Part shown: piece after piece, positions 3,564 through 32,584 of the stretch | Layout: each line of letters starts with the position of its first letter | Numbering within the stretch: the stretch's first letter is position 1 | Assembly (NCBI GenBank): GCA_000388065.2 | Contig: KB932211.1 | Source of the DNA: Fonticula alba ATCC 38817 | Taxonomy: Eukaryota; Protista; Nucleariida | Strand: one strand, 5' to 3' | DNA: 35,475 nt | Made by a program: the position numbers and the translations under genes | The notes under the pieces: model-generated | The model's database searches: none | The model's input: the letters and a program-made list of their open reading frames with translations, nothing else | Told to the model about the DNA's origin: nothing

Positions 3564-3769
3564 GGGGGAGGGGGGAAACAGAGGTTGCCATGTGCCCCAA
3601 AAGCGGCCCCCCGCGCATGCGCCCCCACGCCCACAAATAGATCCCCACACACAGCCCCTCCAAAGAGCAGCCCGGAGGGGGCCCCGGCCCCAGCGAGGGG
3701 GACATTCGAGAGAAGGTCGCACGCCACTCCACAGGACACCGCAAACACAAACCCAAGGAAGGCCTCCCA

Positions 3770-11253: not shown

Positions 11254-11289
<36 letters not shown>

Positions 11290-12132
11290 ACCTGCCCGCC
11301 GGGTGGCTGACAGGGCCNNNNNNNNNNNNNNNNNNNNNNNNNNNNNNNNNNNCCCCCCCCCCCCCCCCCCGGATGCAGCGCCCCGACCGGGGGGGAACAC
11401 CGCGAGATGCCGAGTTCATAAGGGGTCCCCTGGACGGTAGGCGGCTCTCCCGCCCTCCCGCCCCTCCCCCGCAGCCACACGCAGGCCCCAGCGCACCCTG
11501 TTATACGCAAGCCACTCCACAAGCGCGTCGAGATAGGGGATGATCAGGTGAGAGTCATAGCCGATGCTCCGGGTCTGGCCCCGGTAGAGGAAGTTCGATG
11601 AATTCATCAAGTGAAGGACGCCATTCAGATCGATCGGCAACACTCGCCAGGCGTTCCCCTCTCGCCGGTTGAAGAAGTGGCCATAGAGGGACGGGGAGGA
11701 CTTCCTGGCATCCGGAACAGGCCTGGGTTTGGCGGGGCGCCAGGCGCCGGTCGGGCCCGCCGGGCCGGACGGACCACCGCCACCGGTGACACGCGCCCCG
11801 GTGCCCTCCTGGGCAGGTGTCCCGGCGGCAAGTGCCTCTGGCGAGGGGAGGACCACCGGGGCGGAGGGCCGCCCGTGCGGATTCTCCCCATTTTCGCCCT
11901 CGAGGGCGGGCTTGTCGCCATCCTCATCATGGTCATCATCGGTGCCGGGGTCATCATCGGTGCCGGGGTCATCATCGACATCGAGCTCGTCCGAAGCGAT
12001 ACCGCCAGCGTCTTCCATATCAGACGGCGGCTCCCCCTGGTCCAGGGGATCCAGCGAGTCCCCGGAGTCCTCCCGCCGTGGGGGCATGCTGCCGCTCGGC
12101 GTGGTATACAGATTGATTCGATAGATTCCCAT
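7921..12132 (-). CDS. FEN1/XPG-superfamily PIN-domain nuclease, Asteroid-like (XPG_I_2 type), 4 exons, about 1077 aa
   Basis: Exons 12132-11497, 10935-10415, 10317-10133 and 9812-7921 join through GT..AG introns in consistent phase (0, 2, 1), total 3234 nt, stop TAA. Motifs appear in the canonical order: MGI, VLPIDLNG, YPVFVMDG..K..T..ER, SEADE..SLL...VPVLS-PDLDF (split across an intron) and the H3TH motif LPLILGCDF. Small in-frame introns inside exons 2 or 4 cannot be excluded. Confidence 0.82.
11289..11317 (+). repeat. 29-bp exact repeat after poly-C, copy 1 (partner 13618-13646)
   Basis: CACCTGCCCGCCGGGTGGCTGACAGGGCC is present at both sites. This copy abuts an N gap. Confidence 0.85.
11925..11977 (-). 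repeat. 18-bp in-frame tandem repeat (DDDPGT x2) within the nuclease acidic insert
   Basis: TCATCATCGGTGCCGGGG occurs twice on the plus strand. Confidence 0.85.
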
Positions 12133-12164
12133 GGAGTATGGTAGGCGGTGGCGCGCGACGTGGG

Positions 12165-12195
12165 GCAATCAATGGGCGGGATTTCTTTAATAGGA
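12165..12195 (-). promoter_or_regulatory. Possible core promoter of the nuclease gene
   Basis: The minus strand reads TATTAAAG, CCCGCCC and ATTGATTG within about 60 nt of ATG 12132. Motif resemblance only. Confidence 0.3.
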
Positions 12196-13194
12196 GGCGA
12201 GAGATCAAAGAGGGAATCGATGTGTTGCCTGCTCGGGCGGTCGCGTGCATGAGGCCCACTCTTAAGTCTTCTACCAGAAGGGAGAGGGGGGGGCGGGCGG
12301 GCGAGAGACACAGAAAGAGGAATCGCCCCTGGGCTCCGACCCCCGGGCCGGCCTCCGAGAGGAAGCCCCGAAACGGCTGACCAAAGCCACGCCAGAAACT
12401 TCGGCGATCCGCGCTCGCTCTGTTCGTCTTTCCCCCAGCTCGGGGGAGGTGCTCGCCCCCCGCCGCCCCCCCAATGTCGAGGCCCCCGGACCAAAGGGGG
12501 AAGCCGGAGACTCTGGCAAGGGAGGCCACTTGCTTCTTTGGCCTCCCCACTGTTGGGCAGATCTGCCAACGTAGTCAAAAGCCCCAACGCACGGCTCGGC
12601 CAGCGCTCAAGCAACTTGCTCAGGGGTCCGCTGGGCTCCACCCCATTTCGCGGCGCGTGTCCGTGAGATCGCCGGGGCCCGACCTCCCCAGTGGCAAGGC
12701 GGGACCCGCGTTCGGAGCGCCCCGCAGGAAGCGGCCGGGGCTCGGCGCGCTGATCTTCCGAGATGCACAGGCCGAGGGGCGCGGCGCGGGGGCCGCCCTC
12801 TCCGCCGCGCCCATGTCCGGCCGGTCGATCCTCTCCGGCATATCGGCGGCGGTGCCTCCCCCCCCCCGTCCCCGCCGCAAGCAGCCATACTCAAAGCAGG
12901 CAGCTGCCCCAGCCTCGAAGAGGCACGCGTGTCCGGCAAAGGAAAGCCCCAGGCTCGGGCCCCCTGCCTCCTCTGCCTGACGCTGTCCCGCCGCTTGGTG
13001 AACACACGCCCACGATACCATCCAGGCAAGCACCCGCTCGCCCTCCTCCGCCCTCCCCCCTCGCCCGGCCCCTGCCGGGCAAGTGTAATCCAGGGAGTTT
13101 GGCATATTCGATGTCGTGAATGGCCACATGTGTGGTCGACCCAGGGGCCCCTATGGCCTTTCGGAGGGGAGTCCGCACCATGGAAGCCACGCAC

Positions 13195-13260
13195 CTGCTG
13201 CTGCTGCTACTGCTGCTACTGCTGCTACTGCTGCTGCTACTGCTGCTGCTGCTGCTGCTG
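13195..13260. repeat. (CTG/CTA)22 trinucleotide microsatellite
   Basis: Directly visible. Confidence 0.95.
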
Positions 13261-13617
13261 CTTGAGCTCAGCCCCGGGGGCAGGGAAGTTCTTTGGGCCC
13301 CGGCAACCTCCGGCGCGCTCTGGCCACACGGTCTTGCCCGGGTCCGCTCGACCAGCCGCGTGGCGGCCGAACGGCAATCACCCCGGTCGATCGCGAGCGA
13401 AGGAAATCCCGCGGAAGCGGACCACCGAAAGCCCTCCGGCCCGGCGCCAGCGTGTGATGCCGGTGGGCATGTGGATGGGCTGATCCCGGGCCAACACCCC
13501 GGGCGGCTGCCTGTCCATGTCCCCGCTGGCAGAGGGCCGACGCCCATACGCACAACCGGATGCCACCTTTTGGGAAGGCACCGCTTGCCTCCATCCGTGT
13601 CCACCCCCCCCCCCCCC

Positions 13618-13646
13618 CACCTGCCCGCCGGGTGGCTGACAGGGCC
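13618..13646 (+). repeat. 29-bp exact repeat after poly-C, copy 2
   Basis: Identical to 11289-11317. Confidence 0.85.
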
Positions 13647-14329
13647 AAAACCACAGGCTCTGCTCGCCAACCCCCCTCACCCCATGTGCGCCACAATGTG
13701 CATCGTAGCCGGATTGCCACCCCCTCACATCCCCCGCGAACGCCCGACACACAGGGGAAGCACGTCCTATCAGCCCCAGCACGGGCGGCTCATGCGCTGG
13801 CCAGCACACGAGGGAGCATCGGGAAAGGAGGCGCGCGACCGGCCCAAAGGGCGCTGCCTGTGAACGGGAGCCCCGGCGCCCGGGGGGCGTTTCTCATGCA
13901 AGAGAAAAAAAGAAGACCAGGCAGCCAGCCCGTGAGGATGCAACATGCCGGGGCCGGGCATGCACCGCATGCGAGGGATCTCCCCGTTAAGTCAGGCCAC
14001 CCATCTTTGTCAAGCACGCGGTGGATTCAACGATCCGTGCACCCAGGCCGCGCTTCGTAGCCGGCGACACCCAAAAGCATCACCGCCGCAGCCACATAGG
14101 TATCATCGCCAGCAATAGCGGAAATGGTTTCACAGGTAGCCGATGGCAAAGCGCAAGACTGGGGGAAAAAAAGCCCACCATTGGGCCCGGCATGACCTTG
14201 CTAAGAGGGAGTGGGTCTACGGGAAGCAGAAGGAATCCTGCCTGGCCGGAAATAAAGGGAGGGGCAGAGACAGGGAGAAAGAGAGATAGAAGCGGGGAGA
14301 GATTGCAATGCGCCCGGAGAGGCCCACCG

Positions 14330-15260
14330 ACCAGCGCGGCCCGTTCGTTGGCTGTCCCGCTCGCATCATCAAACCATTTAATTTCGCTTTTTCCTTTGAC
14401 AAAGACTACGAGACGCGCACGCACGATACCGACCTCGCGTGCCCTTCTCTCTCTCCCTCTCTCTCTCGCCCCTGCGCCCCTCTGCCCCCATGACGGAGCC
14501 ACCTAAAAGGGAATCGCTCGCCCCCCCCCCCCCCCCCCCCCCCCCCCGTCTCCGGCCTGCTGGTGGCCTCGCTGCTGTGCGGCTNNNNNNNNNNNNNNNN
14601 NNNNNNNNNNNNNNNCCCCCCCCCCCGCCCCTCCTTCTCTTGGCCCCCGCTCGCCTGGCCCCGCGATCAGTGATGCATCCCCACAAGCCAGCAGGTGTCC
14701 GGCTCTCCGACAGGGAAACGGAAGGTCGCGCGCATCGGCCTTCGCGGCCGGGCCACCCTCCACCGGCACACACGCACACGGCCACCGGAAGCACGGCACC
14801 TTTTTTTCCCCTTCTCCCAGCGGGGCAGCCTCCTCCGGGCGCGAAGAAGTGCCCCCTCTCTCCTTGGCAATCCCGGGGGGGGGGGGGGGGGGGGGCTCTC
14901 CTCGCTCGCGCCAAGGGTGCCCGGCGCTCGGCCATGGACCTGCTTTGTGATGTACACCCTTCGGACGTTCGTCCTCGCGCGCAGAAAGGTCCGTGGACGA
15001 AATAGGGTGTTATGGCGCGACCTGCCCGGGTGCATCAAGATTCTCCGCCTGTCTGTCCATGACACCCGGGGGTCGTGTACCTTGGAGAGTGGAGCCGCAG
15101 CCAGCACCACCAGCACCGAGCACATGTCCCCCTCCACCTAGCTGCCCACGGCGCTTCGATTGGAGCTCACACATGCCGGCCCATGGCCAGCATATCCACC
15201 CACGCAGGGGCCCGCTCGCGATCGGTGCATATGTGCGCGTGGGAACACCCACAGCAGCAG
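14330..15260 (+). repeat. Diverged duplicated block, copy B, including motif copy 3 at 14346-14406
   Basis: CGTTGGCTG-N10-ATCATC...TTTTTCCTTTGACAAAGAC, followed by the same collinear anchors as 3770-4810. Confidence 0.65.
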
Positions 15261-17102
15261 CAGCAACAGCAGCCACACGGAGCTGGAGGGCGATGGCATG
15301 CACATCGGCCCACATGCCGCCCGTCCTCCTCGCATGGAGGCGGGCCCAGCTGGGTCAGCTGGATTGCCCCCAACACAGGTACCCCCCCCCCCCAGGGTCC
15401 CTCCTGCGCGCGGGTATGGCGCCTTCTCCCGGCAGCCCGACTCGGCGCCGCGCACCACGCGGGCGTAAGCAAGCACACACCATGGGCGTCCCAATGCCTG
15501 CGCGCCCCTTTGTCCGGCCAGAGGCTGCTCACCCCGCATGCGTGCGAGCCAATGTCCCACATGGGGGAAGCGAGCGGGCCCGACGAAGCAGAGCCGAATG
15601 CATGCACGAACCCTGGCAACAGGTGCCGCTGGATCCCTCGGGGGATCTCGCTCCGGCTGGGCCTCACACGCCAGCCGGGGAGCCAGGCAAGCCGCGACAG
15701 GGGCGCCGGTGGGCATGCTCTCCCGGCCAAATCACAGCCCCCACGTCCGGGCAAACAGCCACCCAGTAGGCCCCGGAGGGGAGCCGCACCCCGGCGAGAA
15801 GAAGGACACCGGCCAGCCTTTTTTTTTTTTTCGCGCGCGCCCCCAGGCGATGAGCTTTGTCATCTTGCAAACATGCCCCGTGCAATGGGGCCCGGAACCC
15901 GAGTCGCCGCCGCGGGCAGGTGCGGGTCCGCGCCCGCGCGCTCGTCCACAGCACAGGCTGCGACACACCCGAGCCAGGTGCCAGCAAAGGGCAACGCAGG
16001 GAGGGGCAGGCCCGGGACCGGCCATGTCGCCGACGCTGTGCCCCCCGGGGGGGGGGGGGGGGGAGGCCCAGCGCGTCGACAGAGTCCGCAGCAAGCAAAA
16101 AAAATGGCCCCGCCTCCCAGGGCATGCGCAGGCGGCGCAAGGGCGAGGCAGACGGAGGGAGCCAAAGCACGGCCCGCGCCGCATCGTGTGCCTTGCGGGC
16201 CGGGCCAGACCCACGGCGAAGGTGGCCGCTTTGACACCCGCACCACGGCTCGACGCGCCCCGCGCGCCCGGGGGCCGCCTTGCCCTGCCGGCCGGGACCA
16301 GCGGAGGTGCCCACAGCGCGGGGCACGATGTTTAAATTTCCAATCGGCATGGCGGCCGGCCCGTTGTCACTTTCCACCATCGCCCCTCCGAGCGGATGGG
16401 CAGGCCGGAGCGCGGTCGAGCCCCGGGCCGGGAGCAGCGCACACACGCGCGCCCCGGGGCACTTCCGTCCATGGCCGCCGACGGCGGGCCCCCGGTCCGG
16501 CCGGGAGACTGGGGCGTCGGCGATCGCACCACGGCCGCCACGCGGACCACCTCGACTCCCGTGCCACCCCCAAGGCCGGCCGCCCAGCAACCACCCACCC
16601 GGCCACCCTGGCGAACATCCGCCGGCCAACAAAGCCGGACGCCCGCGGCCCTGCCCCCGGCGCGACAAGGCCCCGGCGCGCGATCTCCATCAGCGACATC
16701 AGCCCCCGCCCCCTCACGCACCCACCGAAAACACCGCAAAAACTGCCGGGAGCCCGACCAGAGCGAATGCCCCCCTCGCCGGGGCTGACCTCGTAGAAGG
16801 AGGCGCCCCAGAGCCCCAGCCAAGGCAAGGCACTGTTCGGGCGAGGGGGGCTTCCCCGGGGACGGGGGGCAAGAAGCCGGGCCGTCGCCGGTTATGGCTA
16901 TGGTTGCTCGACCGTGCCGGCTTGCGCGCGTGTCGCGTGGCGATCGGCCCGAGAGCCGGGTGCTGGCCACGCGAATGACGCTACATCCGCCGAGACCCCC
17001 CCCCCGGGCAGGCCCCTCTTCCGGCGGACGACCATCAAAGGCATGGCGTCGATCTAAGACACAGGGCGACGGGGGGAGGGGGGGAGTTCCAACGAGCACC
17101 CA

Positions 17103-17899: not shown

Positions 17900-18523
17900 T
17901 CGCCCCCTACACGTGCCCCGAGGGCGTGCACGTGAGCACAGGACACCGCGGGGCCCCATCCTGGAACATACCTCGCGGCCATGTCAATGGTTGGGGTCTT
18001 GGGGCGGAGAGGGGCCCCCCACCCTTGGTGCGATTCTCCGTTCCACCCCCGATCCCAATTCTCAGCCCCTCTCCTTCCGAGGGCGCCTCGCCCCCCCCTT
18101 CCGGGGCTGCCCCTTTGCCGGACATTCGCCGCCCATTCGGGCCCGACTGGGCGGTCCGATCCCGCCCCCTCCGGACAACCTTGCGGCTGCCGGTCGGCTC
18201 GCCCGGTTCGCCAGCTCACTGTGCCCCGGCCGGCGGCGAATGCCCGGCAGAACAGCCGTCAAAGCCGCGCCCCTCAAGTGACCACCGCCCAAACCCGCCA
18301 GCACCCGGCCGGGTCATTTCCCGGACACAGGCCCCCGGCTAGACGGCTGATGGGTGAGTGGTACGGGGCGCCGTCTCGTTCCTCGGGCCAGGGGAGCGGC
18401 TGCGCAGCGACGACGCAGGGCAGAGGGGCACACGGGCCCGGTCGTGGGGATCTCCGGTCCGGCTCTTCGCGGCCAGGCCGGGTCCCCAGGGATCAACAAT
18501 GGNNNNNNNNNNNNNNNNNNNNN

Positions 18524-21500
18524 TACCGAGGTCGACCCCCTCGAGTGCGTGTTCCTCCAAGAGGGCCAGGTCTGCATCGACTCGGGGCTCATGCTGGTGG
18601 CCTTCAGCTTCCATCACCTTGGCCAGGGCAAGCGCGCGATCACGCTCCCGGCGTCGTGCCCCACGGTCAAGTGGTGCCTCAACTGCCTGGACGTGCCGTC
18701 CACCACCAAGACCCAAATCCGAGCCCTCGCTCGCCAGCGCTGGGTTGGCGACATGGCCGCGGCCGGCATCAAGGCCCGGGCCTGCAAGGCCGACTGCCAC
18801 GAGGCCCGCTTGGCGCTGGCCACGCGCCTGGCCGCTCACCAGAACAAGCTCCTGCTCAGCCTCCACGGCAGCCTGGTCCTGGCGGAGTTCGATCACCCCC
18901 TACACAGCCTCCACCCGGACCTGCCCGACGGCCCGGCCAAGACAACGCTCCTCAAGAACAAGCTCTGCCCGGAGGCCCACCTCGAGCCAACCACCACCCC
19001 GGGCCAATTCCTCCTGGCCGATCCATCTCACGGCCGCGGACTCCTAATCCCCCTCGACCGGCTCCCCTGCAAGACCCTCGTCCTGTCGAAGGTGCGTCTC
19101 GCTTGCCGGATCCGCCTTGCTTTTTGTCCCCCCCCCCCCTGAGAAGGCAGCGACCTGCTCGTGCCAGCCCATCGATCACCCATACGTCCCAGGCCTGTGC
19201 CATTCCACCCACTGCTCGACGCTTCTCCCTCCTCCCTCCCCCCCCTCCCACCGCCACTCCTCCCCGCAGCTGTCATGAACTATCGCTTGGAGATACTCGC
19301 CTCCGGGCAGCCGTACCGCTTCACCGATGAGTAGGGCGACGCTCACTGGATCCCCGAGGTACGCCCATGCCGGAAGCCCGAATGGCTCCTCCATCGAGGG
19401 GAACACACACACACACACAGACACAGACACAGACATAGACACAGACACAGACACAGACACACACTCACACTCACACTCATATTCACACTCACACTCACAC
19501 TCTCACCACCCTCGCTCCGGGCCCCGCGCCCCACCCGGCCGGCATCCCCCTGCTCAGGTCGGCCAATCCGGTAGCTTTGCCTTCCGCTGCGAGGATAGGA
19601 TCCTCTTCATCGCAAAGGACAGGGTCCAGTACTACTGCTTCATGACCGGCAATTTACACACCCACAGTCTCATGTCCAGCCGGCTGCCGATCGATCAACA
19701 TGGCACCTTCCATTTGAACGGCCCTCTCCTGTACATATCTTTCCTTGCCCAGCCCATTGGTCTGTTCCTCAGGAGCAAGACCCACCTATTTCCCGAGGTG
19801 CGCCATGGGCAACCCCCTCGCCATGACCGCCCGCCTTCTGTGCTCGTCCGCCCGCCCGCCCGCCCGCCCGCCCGCCCGCCCGCCCGCCCGCCCGCCCACC
19901 TGACCCTCTCCGCCCTTTCTTTGCACCCAAGCGCGGTGTCCCCGGCAGTGACCTCTTCGTATGCAGTCAGCGGGCGTTGCTGCTCGAGAGGAATGGTATC
20001 ACAGCATTCGCCTTCGACTCAACCCGCTCCCCCAACACACGCACCACCTGGTCCACGGTTAGCTCGAAATCATGGGATACCTTCACCCTCGACGGGCCGC
20101 TCCTATGTGCGACATCTCACGACACTCCGGTCGGCCTCTTCGTCGGTGGCTCCACCATCAGCCTGCCCGAGGTATGACACATGCCCGGCCGGGCCGGGCC
20201 GGCCCACATCCCCCTCCTCGGATCTGCCCCGCTGACTTGCCTGCGCCCGGCGTTGGCCCCGACACAGAACCGGACCCCCGGGCACCCGGCCTTTGTCTTC
20301 CATGACACCGTGCTCGCCCTGTTCCAGACCGGAATCCGAAGCTTCTCCCTCAGCATGAAGGGCCAGCCGGCCGACGGGCGTTGCTGGCTGAAGACCAGAA
20401 TCCCGGCCGATGGGACCTTCCTTCTCAAGGGCCCGTTCCTGCACCTGTCCTCCCGGGCCGACCCCATCGGCTTTCTCCACGACCAAGACATCCACCAGAT
20501 GTGCCAGGTGTGTTTCTCCCGTCCGCCGGCCCTTCGCCGCGCCTCACGCCCAATGCTCGTCCCTTGTCTCATGGCTCTTCTCACCCGGCCCCCCCCCCCC
20601 TTCGGCCCCGTTCTCCCGCTTCTCGCCCGCCGCTCCAGAATGGCACCGCCGGCCGGGCTTTCTTCATCCATGGCAACACGGTCCTGCTGAATTTCCGCGG
20701 CGACGTGTGGGAGTTCCGCTTTTCCGACTTCAATGAGCTTCTCAAGCAAACCATCTGGCCCGATGTGGTGGTCACCCCGACCGACACCTTCACCCTGCAG
20801 AGGTCCTTCCTATTTGTATCCTCCCAGAAGTACGCCGTCGGGGTCCTGCTCAACGACCAAATCTATTCGTTCCCCCAGGTACATGGCCGCTTGGCGCTGG
20901 CCCTCCACCCTGCCTGGTCGCTTGCCCGCTCGCCCGCTCGCCCGGTCTCACGCACGCTCTTCCGTAGTACGGCGCATCGGGACACGCGCTCTTCTCGGGC
21001 CCGGGTACCATTTTGCTCATCCACCAGAGCACCGTCTTATCCTTCTCCATCGACAACACCGTCGAGCTGGCACAGGGCCCGGCCTGGGCCAAAATCCCCC
21101 CCTCGCCCGATGCCACATTCGTCCTGGATGGCCCTTTCCTGCGGGTCTCCTCGCACCCGGCCCCGATCGGGCTCTACCACGAGGACCGCCTGCTTCGGCT
21201 GCCGCCAGTGCGCGCGCACACACACACACACACACATGCCTTCACCACCTGCCCCGGGCTACTCACCCGCCCGCCTGCCCTGCCCACAGCTCGGCGCCCC
21301 TGGCCACCCCGAGTTTGTGGCCGAGAATGCCGTGCTCATCGCCAGCAGCAGCAGCATCCGCTTCTTTTCCCTCGATTCGGGCGCCTCTTCGCCCTCGGAG
21401 CTTAGCCCCGCCGGGGAGCAGCACATCCCCCCCGGCAGCACCTTCACCCTGGATGGGCATTTCCTGCGCCTGCCCTCCCTCTTGGCCCCGGTCGGCCTCT

Positions 21501-21916
21501 TCGTCCAGGGCCATGCCCATCCCATGCCCGAGGTATGGCCCTGGTATCCTCTCTGGCTGCCGCTTGCCGTCTGCCCCGCCCCGCCCCGCCCCGCCCACTC
21601 ACTTGCCCCCTCGATCCCCCGTGTGTCGCGCAGGCCGGCGTCGCCGGCCACACCGTCTTCGTTGGTGCCAAGGAGATCTTGCTCCTGCAACGACAGGGCA
21701 TCCACTCCTTCCCCATCCACCCGTCGGGCCAGCCCACCGAGGGGGCCCCCTGGGCTCGGATGCCCATCCCCGCCGGCAGCACCTTCGCCCTGGATGGGCA
21801 CTTCCTGCACGTGTCCTCCCTCCCGGCCCCGGTCGGCCTCTACCACGAGGGCACCGTCTATCCGTTGCCCAAGGTCCGCCCAACGACGGCCACCTGTCGC
21901 CCACCTCCCGCCCCCG

Positions 21917-21947
<31 letters not shown>

Positions 21948-24900
21948 CTGCCTTGCGCTCGCTCACTCCCATGCTCCCGCCGTTGGCTGCGCGCACCCTG
22001 CAGGTCGGCGTCCCGGGGGGCCACATCTTCGCCGGCGCCCGAGAGACCCTCCTCCTGCGGGAAAATGGCATCCACTCCTTCCCGGCCAGCCAGTCCAGCC
22101 GATTCGCCAAGGGGGTCTTCTGGGCCAAGATGCCCATCCCCGCCGGGAGCACCTTCACCCTGGATGGCCATTACCTGCGCGTGTCCTCCCTCCCGGCCCC
22201 GGTCGGCCTCTACATCGAGGACAGTGTCTACCTGCTTCCCAAGGTCCGCCCAACAGCGGCCCCCCGCTCGCCGGACTTTTTTCCCTTTTTCCATTTTTCG
22301 CCATTCCCCCTCTCACACACCACATAGGCCGGTGTCCCGGGCAAGAGGATGTTCGTCCATCGCAAGGTCGTCTTCGTCATCTGCAAGGGCGGCGTCCGGC
22401 TTTTCCCCCTCGGGACTACCCAGCTGTACCCGGATGGTGTGGTCCACATCCCGTGCTCCACGTCATACAGCTCGGCCTTCGCCCTGAAGGGGCCCTTTCT
22501 CCATGTCACCTCGCACGAGCAGCCCCTTGCCCTGCTGTTTAAGGACAACTTCTACCACCTGCCCCCGGTAGGTGCACCGGCCGCCGCCCATCGCCCTGGC
22601 CTTCTGCCCGCCCCCCTGCTGGCCATGTCGCGCCCTCTCACCCTGCCCCCCCCCCGCCCGGCACACTCGCCCGTCCAGGTCGGCCGCCCCGGAAAGCAGG
22701 TGTTCGTCGACCGCCACACCGTCTTCCTCATCCACAAGAACATCGTTCTCGCCTTCTGCCTCCGCCAGCCGGAGCTCGCGCCCGAGGGGACCGTCAGTTG
22801 GCTCCTCCCCGCGGGCAGCGGCGGATGCTTCACCCTGAATGCCCCTTTCCTGGCCGTGTCCACCTCCGACCAGCCCATCGGCCTCCTCGTCGGCGACACC
22901 GTGCATCTGCTTCCCCAGGTCCGAGCCCGCCGCCCTGCCTGCTCGGTGTTGCCGGCCGCCCACCGGCCCGCCCCCCCNNNNNNNNNNNNNNNNNNNNNNN
23001 NNNNNNNNNNNNNNNNNNNNNNNNNNNNNNNNNNNNNNNNNNNNNNNNNNNNNNNNNNNNNNNNNNNNNNNNNNNNNNNNNNNNNNNNNNNNNNNNNNNN
23101 NNNNNNNNNNNNNNNNNNNNNNNNNNNNNNNNNNNNNNNNNNNNNNNNNNNNNNNNNNNNNNNNNNNNNNNNNNNNNNNNNNNNNNNNNNNNNNNNNNNN
23201 NNNNNNNNNNNNNNNNNNNNNNNNNNNNNNNNNNNNNNNNNNNNNNNNNNNNNNNNNNNNNNNNNNNNNNNNNNNNNNNNNNNNNNNNNNNNNNNNNNNN
23301 NNNNNNNNNNNNNNNNNNNNNNNNNNNNNNNNNNNNNNNNNNNNNNNNNNNNNNNNNNNNNNNNNNNNNNNNNNNNNNNNNNNNNNNNNNNNNNNNNNNN
23401 NNNNNNNNNNNNNNNNNNNNNNNNNNNNNNNNNNNNNNNNNNNNNNNNNNNNNNNNNNNNNNNNNNNNNNNNNNNNNNNNNNNNNNNNNCCCCCCCCCCC
23501 CCCCTGGTCAACTCGAATAGGACAAGCCCATCGAGGCCCTGCTGGCCTCCCGGCGCGTGCTGGTCTCCGGTCAGCGGGTCCTCTCGCTCCACGACAACTT
23601 CCTCCTGTGCCATGAGTACCCCTTCGGCGAGGAGCAGTGCCGGCCGGCGGCCTTCGTCTTTGCCCTGCAGCTGCCCCTCTTCCCGGCGACCCTGAGCTTC
23701 ACGGCCGACTTTTTGCCCGCCCAGGACACCTGCCGGGTGCTCATCGACGGCCAGTGGAGCATCGTGGTGGACCTGGCCCGCGGCCGGCCGGTGGACTTCC
23801 TGCCCGGTGATGGGCTCTTGGCCCCCTCGGACCCCGTGCGCCCGGGCCCCTTGCCGCCGCCCGCATCCGCCACAACCATGGCCCATGTGCTGACGTAGCC
23901 CCCCCCCCCCCCCCGCCCCCCCGCCCCACGGACCACCATGGCGCGCAGCCTGCGCTGGCCCGCCCCACCGGCGGCACCGCCGCCATCCTCCCCCGGAGCC
24001 TGGTCGTACTCGACGCCAAGCAAGGCGCCCTGGCCTTCGAGCTGCTGGTCAAAAACCGGCGGCTCCTGCCGCCCTGCGGCCCGGCCCGGCTTTTGCCCCG
24101 CTGGGCCTTCCGCCCGGCCCGCGTCTTCCCGGACCCCCAGCCGGGGGTCGTGGCCATGGCCGCCGGCAATGAGGTGACCCTCCTTTCCCTGGAGGGGGGC
24201 GACCTGATCCGCGGACATCTCCGCCTGGTTCGTGCAGATGCCCGCGCACGCCCCCCCCCCCCCCCCCCGCCCTGCAACGCTCCATGCTTCGGGGCACACA
24301 CAAACACACAGCGAGCAGACTTTCCACCTACCCTTCAATGGCCGCCAGTGTCTGTCCACCACGCAGCTGGACGACGGGTCGCTGGTGATGCAATTTGCCG
24401 ATGGCTACTTCGACATGCTGTCCACCAATCCCGTCATGCATGCGTCGCGACTCTTCCCCTGGCGCGACACGGCCGGTGCGTCCCGCTGCTCCCCGGCCGC
24501 GGCCGGCCCTCGGCGCGCGGTCTCCTGGCGCTGACCCCCCTGCCTGCCTTTTTGATTGCCCCCCCCGCCGGAGGACCCAGGCTGCCTCGACCAGATTTGG
24601 GTCTGTCCCTGGTTCCCGCTCAGCTGGGTGGCCTACCACGCCTCGGGGGAGTTTGTCTTCCACTCGACTCTGCGCAAGCCCAACGTCACGGCCGAGCCCT
24701 GGGCCTTCGTCCCCGCCCGGCGGTCCTTCTCCCTGGGCGTGTCCACATGGCCACGCCCGGCCGCCTGCCAGCCGGGGATCACGCCCCCCCTCGGGGTGGC
24801 CTTCATCCAGCACAAGGACCAGCACTATTGCGTCCTCCTGTACGTCGAGGCGAGCTGCCCTCTCGCTCTCTCTCATCCTCTCGCTCTCTCGCTCTCTCTC

Positions 24901-25363
24901 GCTCTCTCTCGCCCTCTCGCTCTCTCTCGTCCTCTCGCTCTCTCTCGCCCTCTCGCCCTCCCGCTCTCTCGCCCTCTCGCCCTCCCGCTCTCTCGCCCTC
25001 TCGCTCTCTCTCGCCCTCTCGCCCTCTCTCCGCCCCCGCCCCCCTTCCCTCACCATAACCCACAGACACGGGCAGCGGCTGGCGCTCATCCCACGGCGTG
25101 ACATCATCCGGCTATTCATCGATCCAGCGAGCCAGGAAACCCTGTCCAAGCCGCTGCTGTGTTGGATGCAAGACATCCGGGCTCCCGTGCAGGGGGACAT
25201 CTGCGTACCCGGACCGTCCATCCAGCAGCGGCTCACGCACCCGACGGTGGTCCTTCGCCGAAATATCCCCTGGAAGTCGTCCTTCATTGTGCAGCCCTTC
25301 ACCATGGAGAGCCTCACAACCTGCCGGACCCAGATCCCCATCAGGCTCTGGAGCCCGTCATGA
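18524..25363 (+). CDS. Large multi-exon hypothetical protein with tandem 80-aa beta-rich repeats (5' end and one internal segment in gaps; link across 19092-19557 uncertain)
   Basis: Exons: up to 19091; 19270?-19358 (contains an in-frame TAG); ten repeat exons from 19558 to 22918; gap; 23521-23835; 23949-24227; 24319-24475; 24581-24839; 25066-25363 (TGA). The GT..AG junctions from 19558 onward are phase-consistent, and the microsatellites fall in the predicted introns. A possible first micro-exon is ATGG|GTGAGT at 18350-18353. Confidence 0.75.
19404..19505. repeat. Intronic CA / CAGACA / CACTCA compound microsatellite
   Basis: Directly visible, between the donor at 19359 and the acceptor at 19557. 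Confidence 0.9.
19558..22918 (+). repeat. Array of ten phase-0 exons, one 80-aa repeat each
   Basis: Exons 19558-19797, 19932-20171, 20268-20507, 20639-20878, 20968-21207, 21290-21532 (243 bp), 21634-21873, 22004-22243, 22328-22567 and 22679-22918. Introns are 82-134 bp. Consensus xGxPGxxxF...LL...I..F...W...TFxLDGxFLxVxSxxxPVGL......LPx. Confidence 0.92.
19845..19897. repeat. Intronic (CCGC)n microsatellite
   Basis: Directly visible. Confidence 0.9.
24855..25030. repeat. Intronic (CTCTCG)-type compound repeat
   Basis: Directly visible in the last predicted intron. Confidence 0.9.
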
Positions 25364-28300
25364 GTGCCTGGCCCCTTTGCGCGCCCTCGCCCGGACATGG
25401 GCACCCACGCCGCCCACGGGCCCGGGCAATGGCAAGCACCAGGCCCCCGGCACGTGCCCAGCGCCCTTGGGGCGCATGCCTCCCCGGGCCCGGGCCCGCA
25501 GCCGTCCGGCGCGTGTGTCCAGGCAAAGAGCCTCAGCTCGATGCCCCCCCCCCCCCCCGAGCACTTGGCGTCACCCCTTCCCCGCCCCATATGCACGGGT
25601 GCCCATGGCCCTCGCCGCCCGCAGCCGGCTCCCAGGGCGGCCGCTTCCCGAAGGCCCGAGCCGGCCGCCGCCACTCGCCCCGGACGGGGGGGGGGGGACA
25701 GTGTCCCGTCCATCCGGTCCCGACCCCCGGCCAATGGGCCGATTCCCCTCTGGACAATACAGCCACCCTCCATCGGCCTTGCCCACGCGTGAGACCGAGC
25801 TTTTCTTGTTCATCAGCACCCAACGGCCAGCACCCAGGTCGACACACACACACACACACGCGCGCGCGCCTCCCCGACAGACGTGCCCACCGGGCTGTGT
25901 GCCCCGCCCGGCACGCCCACCCCGGCCAGGCGCACTGGCCCATGCTCGCATATGCCTCACGCGGCCGGGCCGGGCTCCATTCGCGCCCATGCCCCTCCGA
26001 GGGGCCCTGTGCCCCTCTTGGTCCTCGACGGGCTCGGGCTTCGTCGAGGCCGGCCCTCCCGAGAGACGTGCCTCGTGGATTTGCTCCCCGTCCCCCCCCT
26101 CTTTTTTTGGCCACTCAGCCGTAGGCAGGGACACCGGAGGGGCGGAATGGCCGCATCGCCTGGGGCGTGGCCCCTGCCCTGACCCCCTGGAGGAAGAACA
26201 CCCCGCCGGAGCGGCAGCCCCGGCAATAGCCCTTCTTCCGCCCAGCGGGGTCCTCCCCCGGCGCCCGCCCCCCCCTCCGCCCCCGGGTCGCGAGCCGACC
26301 ACACCAGGTCGGAGATCCGGACCGGGCGCAATGCAAAGGCCCCGCCACATGCTGAGGAGGGCACTTCCCCGCTTCGCACGGGGGGGGGGGGGGCGGGGGC
26401 CCGGCGGGTTGCCAGTGCGCGTGCGAGCCCAACGGAAGGTGCGCGGCTCGCGCCGGCGGCCGCGGGTGCCATGCCCGGCGGCCTGGCCGGCGGGCGCCGG
26501 CCCAAGCGAAGGCCTCCTGAAGCCCAGCCCCGAGCGTCCAAAGGCCCGGCTCCCGGCCCCGGCGACGGCCGGGCCCTCGACCCTCCGGGACGCATGTGCC
26601 TCTGGTGAAATGGATTTGGCCCATGTCGATCGGATGTCTCCAGACAAGGGGGGCCCCGATGGCCCGGCCCACGATCACCAAGCGCCCGGGTGCCATGCCT
26701 CGCCCGGCCGCACCGGGCCTCACGCCAACAGCTTCTCCCTGTTGCCGGTGGCTTGGAAATACTCCGCCTAAGAGCTGCGTGCGTGCATCGACTCCTGGTC
26801 GGGCCGCGGCTGCACATACTGGCTGGCCCGCCCGGCCAGCAGCCGCGGGACCCCGCCCCGAGCACCGGCAGCAGGCCCATACCCACCCCGGTCGGAGCCC
26901 CTGCCGAGCATGCCGAAACTCGCCCCACGGCATCGGGCCCTCGCCACAGCCCCCCGGCCCAAGCACCGGGGCCTGCACTCCGAGCCCCGCCCGGAGGACA
27001 GGCAAGCCGAGGCCAGCATGTCACCATGGCCCGGCGCCATGGCTACCGCGAGGAGCCAGCCGCCCGGATGTGTGGCGCCTCTGCCGCACAGCTTGCCCTG
27101 CCTCCCCGGGCACGCGGGGGCCACGCACGCCCTCCATCCGGCCTGCAATAGCAGACGAGCAGGCACCCCGGCAGTCAGGCGGGCCTTCGGCCGAATGGCC
27201 ACCCGCGGGACTGCTCGTGCTGCCGGCTGGCCCGGGCCCGGGCCCGGGTCGAGGAGCGTGCCGAACTTGACGTGACCCGCCAGCCGCGGCGTATGCTGCC
27301 GCCAGCGCCCCCGTCCTCGGCCCGCTGGCCAGCACGCATGGCTGAAACCCGGCCAAGGGGCGGGCCGGAGTCTCGAGAAGGGGCGCATAAAAAGCCCCCG
27401 CGAAGACGCCCCGCTTAGACGCCCTGGCCGGAAACCCCAGAAGGGGGAACAAGCACGAGGCCGGCACCAGGCCGCACACGACACACGCGCCAGCCCTGGC
27501 GCGGCTGTGCGAGCCCGCCCGCTCGGCACAAGTGGCTCCTCGTCCTTTTCCCAGCTCCGCACCCTCAATCCGGGGGGGGGGGAGGCGGGGGGGTGCCGGC
27601 GGGAACCGGCGGCAGAATACCCCGGCCTCGGGAGTGCCCCTCGCCGACAAGGGGGCACGGGGCGAGAACGCGTGGCAGGGCCTCGCGGAGCGGCCCCGTC
27701 GTCGCAGACCCAGCTCCAGGGGGGCCGGTCTGGGCCCGAACCGCCGGCCACACCTCGAGGCCGAGCTGCGGGGCGGATGCGCTCGCGCGCTGGGCCCCCC
27801 TTCCGGCCGAGATCGTCCAAACGGGACAAGCTCGTGCTTACGCAAGAACGGGACACATACGCCCGCCAAGCGCGCGCACACACGCAGGAAACCCCGTCGG
27901 CAAAAAGGCTGCTGACCATGAAACACTCTGCGCCCTCACCCTTCCAAAAAAGCTCCCCTTGTTTCGATCTGATGTATGAGCACAAGCCCCCCCGCAGATC
28001 TCCGTGCTGAAAGGCCCCCGGCCGTCATGCCGGAAACATGGCCACCGCCATCGGCCCGGCTGCCTGCCCCCTCGCACCCCTGCCCACGCGGCCGGCCGCC
28101 GGTCCTCATGGCTACTCCCTCGGCTGCCGACGCACATCCTCCCGGCAGGGGTGCGTGTCTTCGGTCCGCGGCAGCCCCTATCCGGCCGATCTGGCTGGCC
28201 TCCGACCGCAAGGGGGCTACCGCGAACCGAAGACACGTCCCCCTGCCGAGCCGGGCGTCGCTGCCCATCGCGCTGCCCATCGCGCTGCCGGCAGGGCCCG

Positions 28301-29105
28301 GCAGCCTCCGAGCGCCCTCGGGTCAGATACACACCGCGCTGGACATTCGCCCGCCACCGGCCGCAGGACACCCCGCTCAAGCCCCGAGTAACCGAGTCGC
28401 CCTCCGCCAGGCCCATGTTGCATGTTGTGCGTGCCTCCAACCTCCATGCGGCCAATGCCCCCGACCCCTGGCTCGGAAATTGCCAGCGGCGCCCAGGTGC
28501 GCCAGCCATTCCGGGCGCCGGCCCGCCCGCGCCCGCATGCTCCGGCACGGCGGGCAAACACAAACACTGAGGGGGAAAAAAAAAGGCCAAAGATATTCAT
28601 CCGTCAGATGCGCGCCCTCCTTGGGGCCATTCGCCGAGTGGCCGGCAGCCACCACAGCCCCCGGAAACAGCTCAATATGTGGAAACCCACCCGGTCAGGG
28701 TCCCTCCGCTGGCCCGCGGCCACGCCGGGCGCCGAGGGACGACAAAGCGCGGCGGACGCCCTCCTGTGGCCGGTCCCAGCATCGCCGGCATCCGCGCAGG
28801 GATACACCGGCCAGAGGCGGGACATGGCCCGGTCTGCCGGGGGTGCCCCGGGCCGCCGGGCCCCGGCGGTGGTGGCGGACTCGTCGGGTCTTGCGGGGCG
28901 GGGCCGGGTGCAGGCCAGCATGCTGCCAGGGAGGGCAGAACCCCCCCGCGCGAGGAGGTCGCGACGCCGGGAGGCCGGGGCGATCCTCGCGTGAGACCAC
29001 CCGGCGTTGCAGGAGGCGTGCCCGGCACAGAATGCCACCCCGGGGGCCCGGACACACCACCGCCCACGGGAGACCACCCCCGGTCAACCACACATTCGCT
29101 GGCCT

Positions 29106-29123
29106 CCCGCCCCCCTATAAAAG
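29106..29123 (+). promoter_or_regulatory. GC box followed by TATA box (CCCGCCCC...TATAAAAG)
   Basis: TATAAAAG at 29116-29123 in an otherwise very GC-rich region, followed by AT-richer sequence. Motif resemblance only. Confidence 0.35.
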
Positions 29124-29166
29124 GCCCCCCTTCCTCGGCGTTCCCAGCCCGGGAGTGAGGCACGTC

Positions 29167-29910
29167 ATGGTTATGTGTCCTGATTATTATTGCCCTTATC
29201 GTCCTGACCTTTTGTCACCCTCTCATCCCTGCTCAGAGCTCCCACCCGACGCACGCCCGTCCGCGCATCTCCCCATCCATCACCCACCATGCTATCTGCC
29301 TCCTTTCATCGAATTAAGCCGCTACTTCAGCAGTTCCAAGCCCGTGGCCACCAGGCCATGCGAGCTCGGAGTCCCACCAGCCGGCAGCCAGCTTCGCATG
29401 CGCGGCCTCAACAGACCGCAGATGCCCCCTCCTCCCCCCCGCCCGCGGGGCGATGCTCCCGGGGCAGAGGCCGGCAAATGCACCTCCACCGTCGGCGCAG
29501 GGGGCAGCGGCAAGGGCCGTTCCATGCCCCCCGCCCGTGCGCGAATCCCATCGAGCCCCATCCCAAACACGGAAAGCACTTCACGCTCTCTGGCATTGTT
29601 GTGAAGCTTCTTGGTGCCCTTGGATTTTTCCCCACGGTCGACTATCTCCAAACCAGCGGCCAAATCCAGCTAGGACCCAAGTTCAGCGCGGAGTGGTATC
29701 TATTGTTTCGTCGCAATACCCGTCCTGGTCAGGAGTGTATGCCAGCCCTGGAGGGGAGATGCCGGAGACGTGCGACTGAGCGCGATGAAATGGTGACGAA
29801 TTGTCTCCTTCTTGCTGAGCCTTAGTTCAAGGAAGGATCGGACACCCAAAAAAATGGCACCAGGGACATTGCCAAGCTGCTGAAAGCGACAACAGTACTT
29901 GTGCACTCGC
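29167..29910 (+). pseudogene. Possible decayed gene of unknown family
   Basis: Lies after the TATA box. Has an out-of-frame hydrophobic stretch (LCVLIIIALIVLTFCHP) and a 178-aa ORF (29289-29825) whose frame continues past a single TAG (..LLAEP*FKEGSDTQKNGTRDIAKLLKATTV). No family recognised. Confidence 0.25.
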
Positions 29911-30136
29911 GCCCTTCCCCTTCCATCTCTCTTTCTCTTTTTTCTTTCTCTCTCCCTCTTGCTCGCTGGCTCGCTGCTTCTCTTTGCCATGGCACCCACC
30001 GCCATGGTGGCCTCCTTGGCGTGTCACCCGCATCGGTCTTTCTTGCTTGACCTCTCGCTAACTCTTCCTCTGCTCTCGCGATGGGTGCCTTCGGCTCTCT
30101 AGGTCGCCCTTTCAGCTGCTCCGGACGGTCCCTGAT

Positions 30137-30180
30137 GAGCCGATAACGTATATATATATATATATATACGTTATCGGCTC
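30137..30180. repeat. Perfect 44-bp palindrome with (TA)10 core
   Basis: GAGCCGATAACG-(TA)10-CGTTATCGGCTC is fully self-complementary. Confidence 0.95.
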
Positions 30181-32144
30181 GCGGGGATGCTCCGCCGATG
30201 AAATAATTGAATTTCGTGCTTTTTTTTCGGGGGGGGAGGGGCGGCCAGTGCGAGATGGCACACGCCGCCGTGCGCCAGCATGCCGGCACACTTGCTCGGA
30301 TATTCGCACGCTTGAACATCTTCCTTGCCCACACACTTGCCCACACGCTCGCCCGCCCGTGTGTAAGACGCAAATGGCCGGGCTTTCCAGAGCCATCCCA
30401 GCGCCGCCCTGCAGACGGGTCAACCCTGCGCGCGCCCGTGCCACCACCCCGGGCCACCGCCGCCCATGTGGCGACCGGCCCTGGCAAGAGGAAAGCCCCG
30501 CAATGTGGCAATGGTGCCCGGGACGCCGGACTCTCGCCCAGGCCCGAGCGTCTCCTTGTTGCTGGCTCCCCGGCCGTCGTGCTGATGACCGCCCCTGGCG
30601 ACAGGGAACAGGGGGGAAGGGGATCAAGAGCATGGCGGCATCGTCGGGGAGCCCCCCCCCCCCCGCCTCCCAGAGGCAGCCGCACTCCAGGCGAGCCGCA
30701 AAGAAGAAGTCGCCTCTCCCTTAAGCCGGCCGGTGGCATTTCGGGCCCCGGCCGAGAGGCGCTGGGCAGATGCACGCGTGTCGGCGCGCGCGGATGCAAG
30801 TCCGTCCCGCCGCCCATGTTTGAGCAAGGCGGCGGGTTCCGACAAGAGGCACGGGCAAAACCGGAGGGAGGCACGGCAGAGGAGGAGTGTCCCCGGCACC
30901 GGTGGATCAGGCCCCGGCAAGGGCGCCGCATGCACACAATCACTTGCCTTCCTGCCTGTCGGCCCCCTGCGATGCGCATCCAGGTAAACATGTCGGCCCC
31001 CCCCCCCCCCCCCCCGACGCAAGGTAAGATCACACCACGCCCTCGGCCGGGAAGCAGGACGTCGGGCACTTTCGCCATGCCACTCACAGACAGGCATCGG
31101 ACGTGCGAGGCCCCGGCATGCACCATTTCCCGTGCGGTCATGCTGCCGCGACGGCGGCGACCGCCACCGAGGCCCCTCCCTGCACGGCTCCCGCCGACCC
31201 GGCCCCCGGGCATGCCGCATCCGTCGAGTGCCTCGCGCATGCTGGGTGCCTGCGTACCCGATGTCCGATCGGCCGCTGGCGGGTGTGCAGGCAACGCCCG
31301 GCCCCTCCCCCCCTCCCGGGCGCCCGCCGTCCCCGGAAAAGGGGAGTGCCACGGTGCCCCCACCGGCCTGCCTTTTTCATGGTCCCCATCATGGGTCGAG
31401 AGACACAGGTGTGCCTTGCTTGCATCTCCGGGGGGCATTTGTCTGTACCATTGCGCGCGCACCACGGCCGGGCGGCCAGAGAAGGCGTGCCAAGGACGAC
31501 CCCTGTCCATATTGCCAGGATGCGGACGTGCCCATCCTTCGCGAGGGTGGCAACGTGGCGCGACCCGGCGCTGGGGCGAGGCAGCCCATCGCCACGCCCG
31601 ACACCCAAACCCGGCCGGGGAAAGTGTGCCCACGCGCGAAGACCACAGCAGAGAGCCCCCCCCCCCCCCCCCAGCCCCCCGCTCGCCGCCTCCCCTGGGC
31701 TCACTTCCCGACCGACGCCACCATCCCAGGGGACGGATCTCCTTGCAGCCAGGCAGCAAGGGCGGGACACAACTCCGCAGCCATACAGCCGTCCCTTGTT
31801 GGGGAAGGACAGCCGAGAGGCCGAGGAATGAGGCAACAGGACAGCGCCCACCGGAGCAAGGGAATGCCGGGATGGCGAACTGCTGCCATCTGGGGGCCGG
31901 CACGCGCCGCGCCGGGGGCGTCGCCGTGCACGGCAGACCACCCGCCCAGCCTGGGGACACACTCCCCCGCCAGGTGAGGAGAGACCGACAGACGGGGGGG
32001 GGGTCTAAAGGGGACACCGCTGGCTCGGCACCCGGCCGCGGTGCCCACATGTGTGGCCGCCCATCCTCCCCGGAGAAGATCCACGAGGCAAGCTCACAGG
32101 CCCATCGCCGTGAAAAGCCGGCAGGCAAGAGTGCGGTGGGGTAC

Positions 32145-32146
<2 letters not shown>

Positions 32147-32176
<30 letters not shown>
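32147..32176. repeat. (GA)15 microsatellite
   Basis: Directly visible. Confidence 0.95.
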
Positions 32177-32181
<5 letters not shown>

Positions 32182-32562: not shown

Positions 32563-32584
32563 CACACACACACACACACACACA
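32563..32584. repeat. (CA)11 microsatellite
   Basis: Directly visible. Confidence 0.9.

What the first reader, a model, noticed from the sequence alone, without database searches (positions are those of the whole stretch)
19558..22918. One-exon-one-domain array: ten symmetric phase-0 exons encoding an unrecognised 80-aa repeat
Seen: nine exons of exactly 240 bp and one of 243 bp, all phase 0 at both ends, separated by unrelated introns of 82-134 bp. Scaffold positions are nearly fixed (G5, F9, F51, L53, L58, P66, G68, P79), while residues ~27-48 vary widely with almost no length change. The six-frame ORF track hides this pattern. Established: symmetric exons can be duplicated, deleted or skipped without frameshift, as in exon-shuffled repeat proteins. 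Inference: about eight short hydrophobic strands per unit could form two 4-stranded beta-propeller blades or one beta-sandwich. The locus may be an expandable, variable-specificity binding protein. I recognise no WD40, kelch or LRR signature.
Basis: partly seen in the sequence, partly recalled or inferred. Interest (0 to 1): 0.82.

Follow-up and report, generated by a model that had tools for sequence, protein, structure and literature searches.

The report
Exon-per-repeat beta-blade array, Fonticula gene
Ten equal-sized exons of a slime-mould (Fonticula alba) gene each encode one copy of an unnamed 80-residue all-beta repeat that most likely folds as two beta-propeller-type blades; it is a real, lineage-restricted repeat protein grown by exon duplication, and nothing shows that it varies its specificity.

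Summary
There are nine 240-bp exons and one 243-bp exon at 19558-22918 (+). All are phase 0 at both ends, all introns are GT-AG and 82-134 nt long, and the conserved scaffold residues are as listed.

The window is Fonticula alba. The array is the middle of the annotated hypothetical protein H696_05421 (1401 aa).

A profile of the ten units, run against 1.84 billion representative proteins, finds only this protein and one Fonticula paralog. A third paralog shares the flanking domains. There is no Pfam hit and no sequence hit to any solved structure.

AlphaFold2 on two consecutive units gives a confident all-beta model (pLDDT 87.9, pTM 0.81) with 8 strands per unit. Five fold searches return almost only beta-propellers. 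One unit overlays two adjacent blades at 2.5-3.6 A, but the scores are weak (Z at most 5.7, TM below 0.5), and how the blades close into rings is unresolved.

In the paralog each unit also sits on its own phase 0-0 exon, so "one exon = one unit" is ancestral and the array grew by tandem exon duplication.

No RNA run holds the locus, so splicing, exon skipping and any role in diversification are untested.

Verdict: a new sequence family of a known fold class, of moderate interest.

The parts
18591..19091 (+). Annotated first coding exon (N-terminal region, aa 1-167 of P0001). The model is probably truncated at its 5' end.
   Evidence: Exact mapping of P0001 on the window. Homology to paralog P0003 runs upstream of the annotated ATG to 18528, right at the 21-N gap at 18503-18523.
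19335..19358 (+). 24-nt phase 0-0 mini-exon (ends ...IPE, like the end of a unit). It exists only in the annotation.
   Evidence: Mapping of P0001. AG before and GT after, read from the sequence.
19558..19797 (+). Unit 1 exon, 240 bp, phase 0-0
19932..20171 (+). Unit 2 exon, 240 bp, phase 0-0
20268..20507 (+). Unit 3 exon, 240 bp, phase 0-0
20639..20878 (+). Unit 4 exon, 240 bp, phase 0-0
20968..21207 (+). Unit 5 exon, 240 bp, phase 0-0
21290..21532 (+). Unit 6 exon, 243 bp, phase 0-0 (one extra residue in the variable loop)
21634..21873 (+). Unit 7 exon, 240 bp. First unit of the two-unit structure model.
22004..22243 (+). Unit 8 exon, 240 bp. 64% identical to unit 7, the youngest duplicate. 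The introns that follow units 7 and 8 share about their first 18 nt.
22328..22567 (+). Unit 9 exon, 240 bp, phase 0-0
22679..22918 (+). Unit 10 exon, 240 bp, phase 0-0
22978..23489 (.). 512-N assembly gap inside the intron after unit 10. It could hide a further unit.
   Evidence: The DNA contigs laid on the locus stop in poly-C on both sides and do not bridge the gap.
23521..25363 (+). Five exons of the C-terminal region (aa 977-1401), about 43% identical to paralogs P0003 and P0010. Exons at 23521-23835, 23949-24227, about 24349-24477, about 24583-24840 and about 25067-25363 including the stop codon.

Best explanation
The ten exons are genuine coding exons of Fonticula alba gene H696_05421. 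Each encodes one 80-residue all-beta module of eight short strands. This module most likely forms two four-stranded antiparallel meander sheets, that is, two beta-propeller-type blades, so the array supplies about 20 blades.

The array lies between an N-terminal region of about 175 aa and a C-terminal region of about 425 aa. Both regions are shared with two shorter Fonticula paralogs.

In the paralog whose gene was mapped (P0003), the one good unit and the one degenerate unit each occupy their own phase 0-0 exon. So 'one exon = one module' was ancestral. H696_05421 then expanded the internal module by repeated tandem duplication of an exon plus its intron; the phase-0 symmetry kept the reading frame. 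Most copies are old. Units 7 and 8 are the youngest pair.

The product is inferred to be a soluble, intracellular multi-blade scaffold or binding platform: no signal-like N-terminus in the paralogs (read by eye), no transmembrane segment, and no conserved cysteines.

Shown: the exon structure, the repeat, the restriction to one lineage, the all-beta prediction, and the exon structure of the paralog. Inferred: blade identity, how the blades close into propellers, cellular location and function.
For: - Exon and phase structure and repeat significance.
- Coding-type GC3 bias.
- The same exons are used in the public model P0001 (H696_05421).
- A profile search of 1.84e9 representatives returns only P0001 and the Fonticula paralog P0003 as credible hits. 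A third paralog, P0010, was found through the C-terminal region.
- The P0003 gene has its unit on a 237-bp phase 0-0 exon and its degenerate unit on a 216-bp phase 0-0 exon.
- Units 7 and 8 are 64% identical, and the introns that follow them share their 5' ends.
- A single unit folds poorly (pLDDT 62.6), but two units fold with pLDDT 87.9 and pTM 0.81, giving 16 strands and no helix.
- Structural neighbours are almost all beta-propellers. One unit overlays two adjacent blades of NanA sialidase, DDB1 BPC, LRRK1 WD40 and Reg_prop proteins at 2.5-3.6 A over 64-72 residues. Three to four blades overlay lactonase, PQQ, kelch and LVIVD propellers at TM 0.38-0.45. Foldseek lists are also propeller-only.
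- The ESM model of paralog P0003, though poor, has tandem-propeller neighbours.
- No 19-residue window exceeds a Kyte-Doolittle mean of 1.52, and no cysteine column is conserved.
Against: - All structural matches are weak: Z <= 5.7, Foldseek E >= 6e-3 apart from the paralog's own AFDB model (1.7e-4), and TM < 0.5. The tool's own note says Z under 8 can be just a common arrangement.
- Alignments that span both units have rmsd of 9-11 A, so the modelled inter-unit geometry is not a canonical propeller arc.
- Only 2 of the 5 AF2 models were confident.
- The alignment behind the model consists of paralogous units placed in both halves, which can blur intra-unit and inter-unit contacts.
- The two halves of a unit show no detectable sequence similarity to each other, and none to the C-terminal region.
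- No transcript evidence exists for any junction.
Confidence: 0.6

Rival explanations
1. Each unit is an autonomous beta-sandwich domain (Ig-like, HYR-like or PPC-like), and the ten domains are strung like beads, as in adhesins.
For: The 80-aa size fits. The one-exon-one-domain layout fits. The weak profile hits outside Fonticula are bacterial proteins made of PPC, HYR and Big repeats.
Against: Those hits cover only part of the profile (positions 23-68), with E values of 1e-5 to 1e-4 summed over several repeated stretches per protein (4 to 8). A single unit folds poorly while two units fold well. No sandwich family appears among the structural neighbours, apart from one TM 0.20 row. There are no conserved cysteines and no signal peptide.
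Confidence: 0.17
2. The array is a diversification device: a binding protein whose specificity or length is varied by exon skipping, or by copy-number change between strains.
For: All exons are phase 0-0, so any subset can be skipped or duplicated in frame. The predicted loop columns 27-48 are the most variable. dN/dS between units is high, 0.6-1.1.
Against: dS is near saturation and codon bias is strong, so the dN/dS ratios are unreliable. Variable loops on conserved strands are normal for any beta repeat. The DNA contigs of three 2025 runs laid here (two labelled as another organism, one sediment metagenome) match letter for letter and show no unit-skipping joints. No RNA data exist. Phase 0 is also the rule in the non-repeat exons of this gene and of its paralog.
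Confidence: 0.08
3. The protein is a very divergent member of a named propeller family, such as DDB1/CPSF160/Rse1-type triple propellers, or the CNH or HOPS/CORVET-type propellers.
For: The AlphaFold DB entry of the paralog carries the automatic name 'CPSF A subunit N-terminal domain-containing'. MMS1 is the top feature neighbour of P0003. Blades of DDB1 BPC are among the best overlays. CNH, Vps16, Vps39 and RMC1 appear in the lists.
Against: Pfam gives no family at E <= 1 for full-length P0001 or P0003. Neither the units, the C-terminal profile nor P0003 hits any solved chain at E <= 10, apart from one chance-level match (E 0.62, cerebellin-GluD2 fusion), although DDB1 (seen) and, to my knowledge, CPSF160 and SF3B3 are in the PDB. 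The Atlas scores of 0.74-0.80 are within the range that shuffled proteins reach.
Confidence: 0.1
4. The array is not a functional gene but a decaying pseudogene or an annotation artefact in GC-rich DNA that is full of chance ORFs.
For: There is no transcript evidence. The window is full of long spurious ORFs. dN/dS between units is high.
Against: Ten of ten units are open with exact GT-AG phase-0 borders. Core residues are conserved while the DNA has diverged to 20-64% protein identity. The GC3 bias is frame-specific. Paralogs have the same exon logic. The fold prediction is confident.
Confidence: 0.04

Closest known systems
Beta-propeller repeat proteins in general (WD40, kelch, PQQ, Reg_prop, YWTD and DDB1-type blades)
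   Same: Four-stranded antiparallel meander sheets of about 40 residues follow head to tail. Hydrophobic residues are conserved in the strands and Gly/Pro in the turns. One unit overlays two adjacent blades at 2.5-3.6 A.
   Different: No sequence signature of any Pfam propeller family. The repeating unit is a double blade of 80 aa whose halves are not detectably alike. Ring closure and blade number are unknown. The modelled two-unit geometry does not fit a canonical arc (rmsd 9-11 A).
Hemopexin-like four-bladed propellers (MMP-9, MMP-2, vitronectin)
   Same: They are the top Foldseek PDB hits for the 160-residue, four-sheet model. They also appear in the Swiss-Prot list.
   Different: E is only 0.02, TM 0.17-0.21 and rmsd about 15 A. 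There is no Pfam hemopexin match. The youngest duplication is of a single unit (7/8), not of a two-unit ring.
Exon-per-module repeat genes of animals (Ig, FN3 and EGF modules spread by exon shuffling)
   Same: One symmetric exon encodes one structural module, so duplication or loss of an exon keeps the frame.
   Different: From general knowledge, classic shuffled modules are mostly phase 1-1, extracellular, cysteine-rich, and found in many architectures. Here the phase is 0-0, there are no conserved cysteines and no signal peptide, and the module is confined to one gene family of one species.
Fonticula alba paralogs H696_06165 (P0003, 872 aa) and P0010 (796 aa)
   Same: The same N- and C-terminal regions, at about 42-43% identity. 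P0003 has the same unit on its own phase 0-0 exon.
   Different: P0003 carries one good and one degenerate unit, and P0010 a partial and a degenerate one, instead of a ten-unit array. The good unit of P0003 lies before the N-terminal region, not after it.

Membership tests
WD40 / kelch / other Pfam propeller repeat families | Significant match to the family profile HMM | tested here: not met
   The ten units were scanned at E <= 10. The only hit was a chance-level 2OG-FeII_Oxy match (E 0.047, below cut-off). Full-length P0001 and P0003 scanned at E <= 1 gave no family.
Beta-propeller fold (structural class) | Blades that are four-stranded antiparallel meander sheets packed face to face | tested here: met
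   This rests on a prediction only. The model has 8 strands per unit and no helix, with pLDDT 87.9. One unit overlays two adjacent blades of many propellers, 64-72 residues at 2.5-3.6 A, Z 4-5.7. The support is weak but consistent.
Beta-propeller fold (structural class) | Blades arranged radially and closed into a ring of 4-10+ blades | tested here: inconclusive
   Only two units could be modelled. Four-blade overlays give TM 0.38-0.45 or rmsd 9-11 A.
DDB1 / CPSF160 / Rse1 (MMS1_N, CPSF_A) triple-propeller family | Sequence match to the family profiles or to solved members | tested here: not met
   No Pfam hit. No solved-chain sequence hit at E <= 10 for P0003 or for the C-terminal profile. 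The only pointers are an automatic name in AFDB and weak blade overlays.
Ig-like / HYR / PPC beta-sandwich repeats | Profile match, and a sandwich fold of a single autonomous domain | tested here: not met
   No Pfam match. The bacterial hits cover only part of the profile. A single unit folds poorly. The structural neighbours are propellers, not sandwiches.
Exon-shuffled mobile modules | The same module is found in several unrelated domain architectures | tested here: not met
   A search of 1.84e9 representatives finds the unit only in P0001 and its paralog P0003. A third paralog has a partial unit.
Exon-shuffled mobile modules | The module is bounded by introns of the same phase | tested here: met
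   All ten exons are phase 0-0. The unit exons of P0003 are phase 0-0 as well.

The most novel reading that the evidence does not exclude
The 80-residue double-blade module is an orphan fold unit that does not close into ordinary 6-8-bladed propellers. Instead it builds an open or outsized blade super-structure, whose length the gene can tune exon by exon, through duplication over evolutionary time and possibly through in-frame exon skipping in transcripts. This would be a Fonticula-specific invention.
Probability: 0.12. Interest if true: 0.6.

Novelty: new member of a known kind. Interest (0 to 1): 0.36.

Why it matters
The finding gives a first structural reading of an uncharacterised protein family that appears to be specific to Fonticula. 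Fonticula alba is a key species for the origin of fungal-side multicellularity. The locus is also a clean, datable example of a repeat protein built by tandem duplication of a symmetric exon outside animals: mostly old copies, one young pair, and paralogs that keep the pre-expansion state. If the blades form an unusual non-closing architecture, that would interest structural biologists. Otherwise it is a tidy but ordinary case of propeller-repeat expansion.

Tried and rejected
- Pfam on the single units and on the whole proteins: nothing.
- Sequence searches of solved structures with the unit profile, the C-terminal profile and P0003: nothing useful.
- Profile-profile comparison of the unit against the C-terminal region, and of the first half of the unit against the second half: no similarity. 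I therefore could not show that the flanks are degenerate units, or that the unit is an internal duplication.
- Protein-atlas feature searches: scores of 0.74-0.88, which are leads only.
- Word-indexed homolog search with a family alignment: returned only P0003.
- A four-unit sliding-window alignment for a longer fold: MAFFT produced a staircase of identical overlaps, so I used the two-unit alignment instead.
- Search for an upstream unit like the N-terminal one of P0003: only a spurious low-complexity hit at 12317-12523.
- RNA evidence: no listed RNA run holds the stretch.
- Laying DNA contigs on the locus: the 512-N gap was not bridged, and the joints reported all end in the poly-C tract at 23899-23927, so they are artefacts.
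- Unit tree: unresolved except for weak 1/10/9 grouping.
- Gene locus of P0010: not on record.
- Ten long ORFs elsewhere in the window: no Pfam family.
- Literature: no paper names these genes.
Full report
**What is there.** They lie at 19558-19797, 19932-20171, 20268-20507, 20639-20878, 20968-21207, 21290-21532 (243 bp), 21634-21873, 22004-22243, 22328-22567 and 22679-22918. The nine introns between them are 82-134 nt long, all GT..AG, and strongly C-rich on the sense strand (45-62% C).

The translated units align with one single-residue indel. G5, F9, F51, L53 and L58 are invariant, and G2, F26, P66, G68 and P79 are at least 90% conserved. Pairwise identity is 20-64%.

A profile of the units finds these ten copies and nothing else in the six-frame translation of the window. 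Each unit is still found at E <= 4e-13 by a profile built from the other nine. In-frame GC3 is 0.75-0.91, against GC2 of 0.36-0.59.

Two details need correcting:
- Introns 7 and 8 share about their first 18 nt (16 of 18 identical by eye), so the introns are not all unrelated.
- A 512-N gap (22978-23489) lies in the intron after unit 10, so ten is a minimum count.

**Whose gene it is.** A HMMER search with the ten-unit profile against 1.84 billion representative proteins returned six proteins. The best (988 bits, ten stretches) is P0001. This is the 1401-aa 'hypothetical protein H696_05421' of Fonticula alba (XP_009497530.1, A0A058Z241).

P0001 maps exactly onto the window and uses the same ten exons:
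- A first coding exon at 18591-19091 and a 24-nt mini-exon at 19335-19358 come before the array.
- Five C-terminal exons between 23521 and 25363 come after it.

The second credible hit is P0003 (H696_06165, 872 aa), also from Fonticula. It has one good unit at residues 83-162. The remaining hits are a perfect-tandem ENA protein and bacterial PPC, HYR and Big repeat proteins. They match only part of the profile at weak E-values, and I regard them as noise or at most generic beta-strand similarity.

A search with the C-terminal region of P0003 found a third Fonticula paralog, P0010 (796 aa), and nothing outside Fonticula. A family-alignment search added nothing. Pfam gives no family for the units or for full-length P0001 and P0003. 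No solved structure shares detectable sequence similarity. No paper in the library names these genes.

**Family architecture and origin of the array.** P0001 and P0003 share an N-terminal region (42% identity over about 150 aa) and a C-terminal region (43% identity over about 440 aa). Where P0001 has ten units, P0003 has one degenerate unit.

I mapped P0003 onto its own locus, L001:
- Its good unit is a separate 237-bp exon (aa 85-163).
- Its degenerate unit is a separate 216-bp exon (aa 344-415).
- Both exons are phase 0-0.

So the 'one exon = one unit' layout predates the expansion. The array in H696_05421 is best explained by repeated tandem duplication of an exon together with its intron. 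Most copies are old: terminal branch lengths are about 1 change per site and the tree is unresolved. Units 7 and 8 are the youngest pair, at 64% identity, and the introns that follow them are still alike at their 5' ends.

Phase 0 is also the rule for the neighbouring non-repeat exons of both genes. The symmetry is therefore a property of the gene family and not a special adaptation of the array.

**Fold.** AlphaFold2 on one unit, with 14 aligned units, gave a weak model (pLDDT 62.6) with eight strands. The first four strands were better defined than the last four.

For a longer query I aligned all in-phase and out-of-phase two-unit segments. MAFFT kept them in unit register. A four-unit version collapsed into a staircase and was dropped.

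The two-unit model of units 7+8 is confident: pLDDT 87.9, pTM 0.81, 16 strands and no helix. However, only two of the five networks agreed.

Five independent fold searches returned almost only beta-propellers:
- Foldseek on the PDB: hemopexin, BLIP-II, BamB, PROPPINs, clathrin terminal domain; E >= 0.02.
- AFDB clusters: the best hit is the paralog's own model, followed by CNH, Reg_prop histidine kinases and lactonases.
- Swiss-Prot AFDB: RMC1, Vps16, Vps39, CNH kinases, coatomer.
- ESM Atlas shape search: lactonase, PQQ, kelch, SGL/NHL, LVIVD, Reg_prop; TM 0.38-0.45 over 95-124 residues.
- VIA-align: one unit (residues 6-79 or 86-160) overlays two adjacent blades of NanA sialidase, DDB1 BPC, LRRK1 WD40, BT4673 and others, with 64-72 residues at 2.5-3.6 A and Z 4-5.7.

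The poor ESM model of P0003 also has tandem-propeller neighbours.

All of these scores are weak by the tools' own yardsticks. Alignments that span both units have rmsd of 9-11 A. I therefore take 'two propeller-type blades per unit' as the best-supported reading, at about 0.6. How the roughly 20 blades, plus whatever the flanks contribute, close into rings is unresolved.

The two halves of the unit, and the unit versus the C-terminal region, show no detectable profile similarity.

**Likely function.** No 19-residue window in any of the three paralogs reaches a transmembrane-like hydrophobicity (maximum Kyte-Doolittle mean 1.52). By eye, the N-termini of P0003 and P0010 do not look like signal peptides. 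No cysteine column is conserved in the units. By inference, the protein is a soluble intracellular blade-repeat scaffold or binding platform. Its partners are unknown.

**The diversification idea.** Columns 27-48 are the most variable (2.25 bits against 1.5-1.8). They coincide with the predicted loops between strands 3-4 and 4-5, which is what any beta repeat shows. dN/dS between units is 0.6-1.1, but dS is near saturation and codon bias is strong, so these ratios are weak evidence.

No listed RNA run holds the locus, so neither the junctions nor exon skipping could be tested. DNA contigs of the original 2012 sample cover the array. Contigs from 2025 runs, labelled as another organism and as a sediment metagenome, match letter for letter at about 3x depth with no unit-skipping joints. 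They therefore give no information on copy-number variation between strains. The reported joints all run into the poly-C tract at 23899-23927 and are artefacts. The 512-N gap was not bridged.

**Comparison and verdict.**
- The array works like a propeller-repeat protein, but it fails every sequence-based membership test for named families (WD40, kelch, DDB1/CPSF_A, hemopexin, Ig-like).
- It resembles exon-shuffled modules in its symmetric exon borders.
- It is not a shuffled module, because it is confined to one gene family of one species.
- It is best filed as a new, lineage-restricted sequence family within a known fold class, expanded by in-place exon duplication.
- Earlier notes of this scan near the locus did not bear on it.

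Interest is moderate: a clean example and a first annotation for an orphan Fonticula family, but not a surprise to a specialist unless the blades turn out to form a non-canonical architecture.

Noticed in passing
window 18503-18591: The annotated start codon of H696_05421 (18591) lies 68 nt after a 21-N gap. Homology to paralog P0003 (its residues 158-183) continues upstream of the ATG to 18528, right at the gap. The public model is therefore probably truncated at its 5' end. P0003 has about 157 more N-terminal residues, including a unit.
   Followed up: partly
window 24313-24349: The annotated acceptor at 24349 drops a motif conserved in both paralogs (LPFxGRxCL, present in frame in the window). 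In-frame AG acceptors exist for exon starts at 24316 and 24319. Either would add about 10-11 conserved residues.
   Followed up: partly
window 19798-22678 (introns of the array) and 19001-25000: The introns are extremely C-rich on the sense strand (45-62% C), with long poly-C tracts and CCGC/GCCCC microsatellites. GC skew stays at -0.25 to -0.33 across the whole gene. The poly-C tracts are where the independent short-read contigs break.
   Followed up: partly
window 19300-24300, runs X8, X10 (organism B, 2025) and X9 (sediment metagenome, 2025): Runs labelled as a different organism, and a sediment metagenome, contain short contigs letter-identical to this Fonticula locus at about 3x depth. 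This suggests the same strain is present as a co-cultured or contaminating eukaryote.
   Followed up: no
window 19403-19506: A compound (CA)n/(CAGA)n/(CACACT)n microsatellite of about 100 nt fills much of the 199-nt intron in front of unit 1. A (CA)10 tract lies in intron 5 (21217-21236).
   Followed up: no
window 2649-16796 and 25957-34220: Ten of the longest ORFs elsewhere in the window, on both strands, have no Pfam family at E <= 0.001. In this roughly 70% GC DNA, most long ORFs are probably chance read-through, so the six-frame ORF list is a poor guide to genes.
   Followed up: partly
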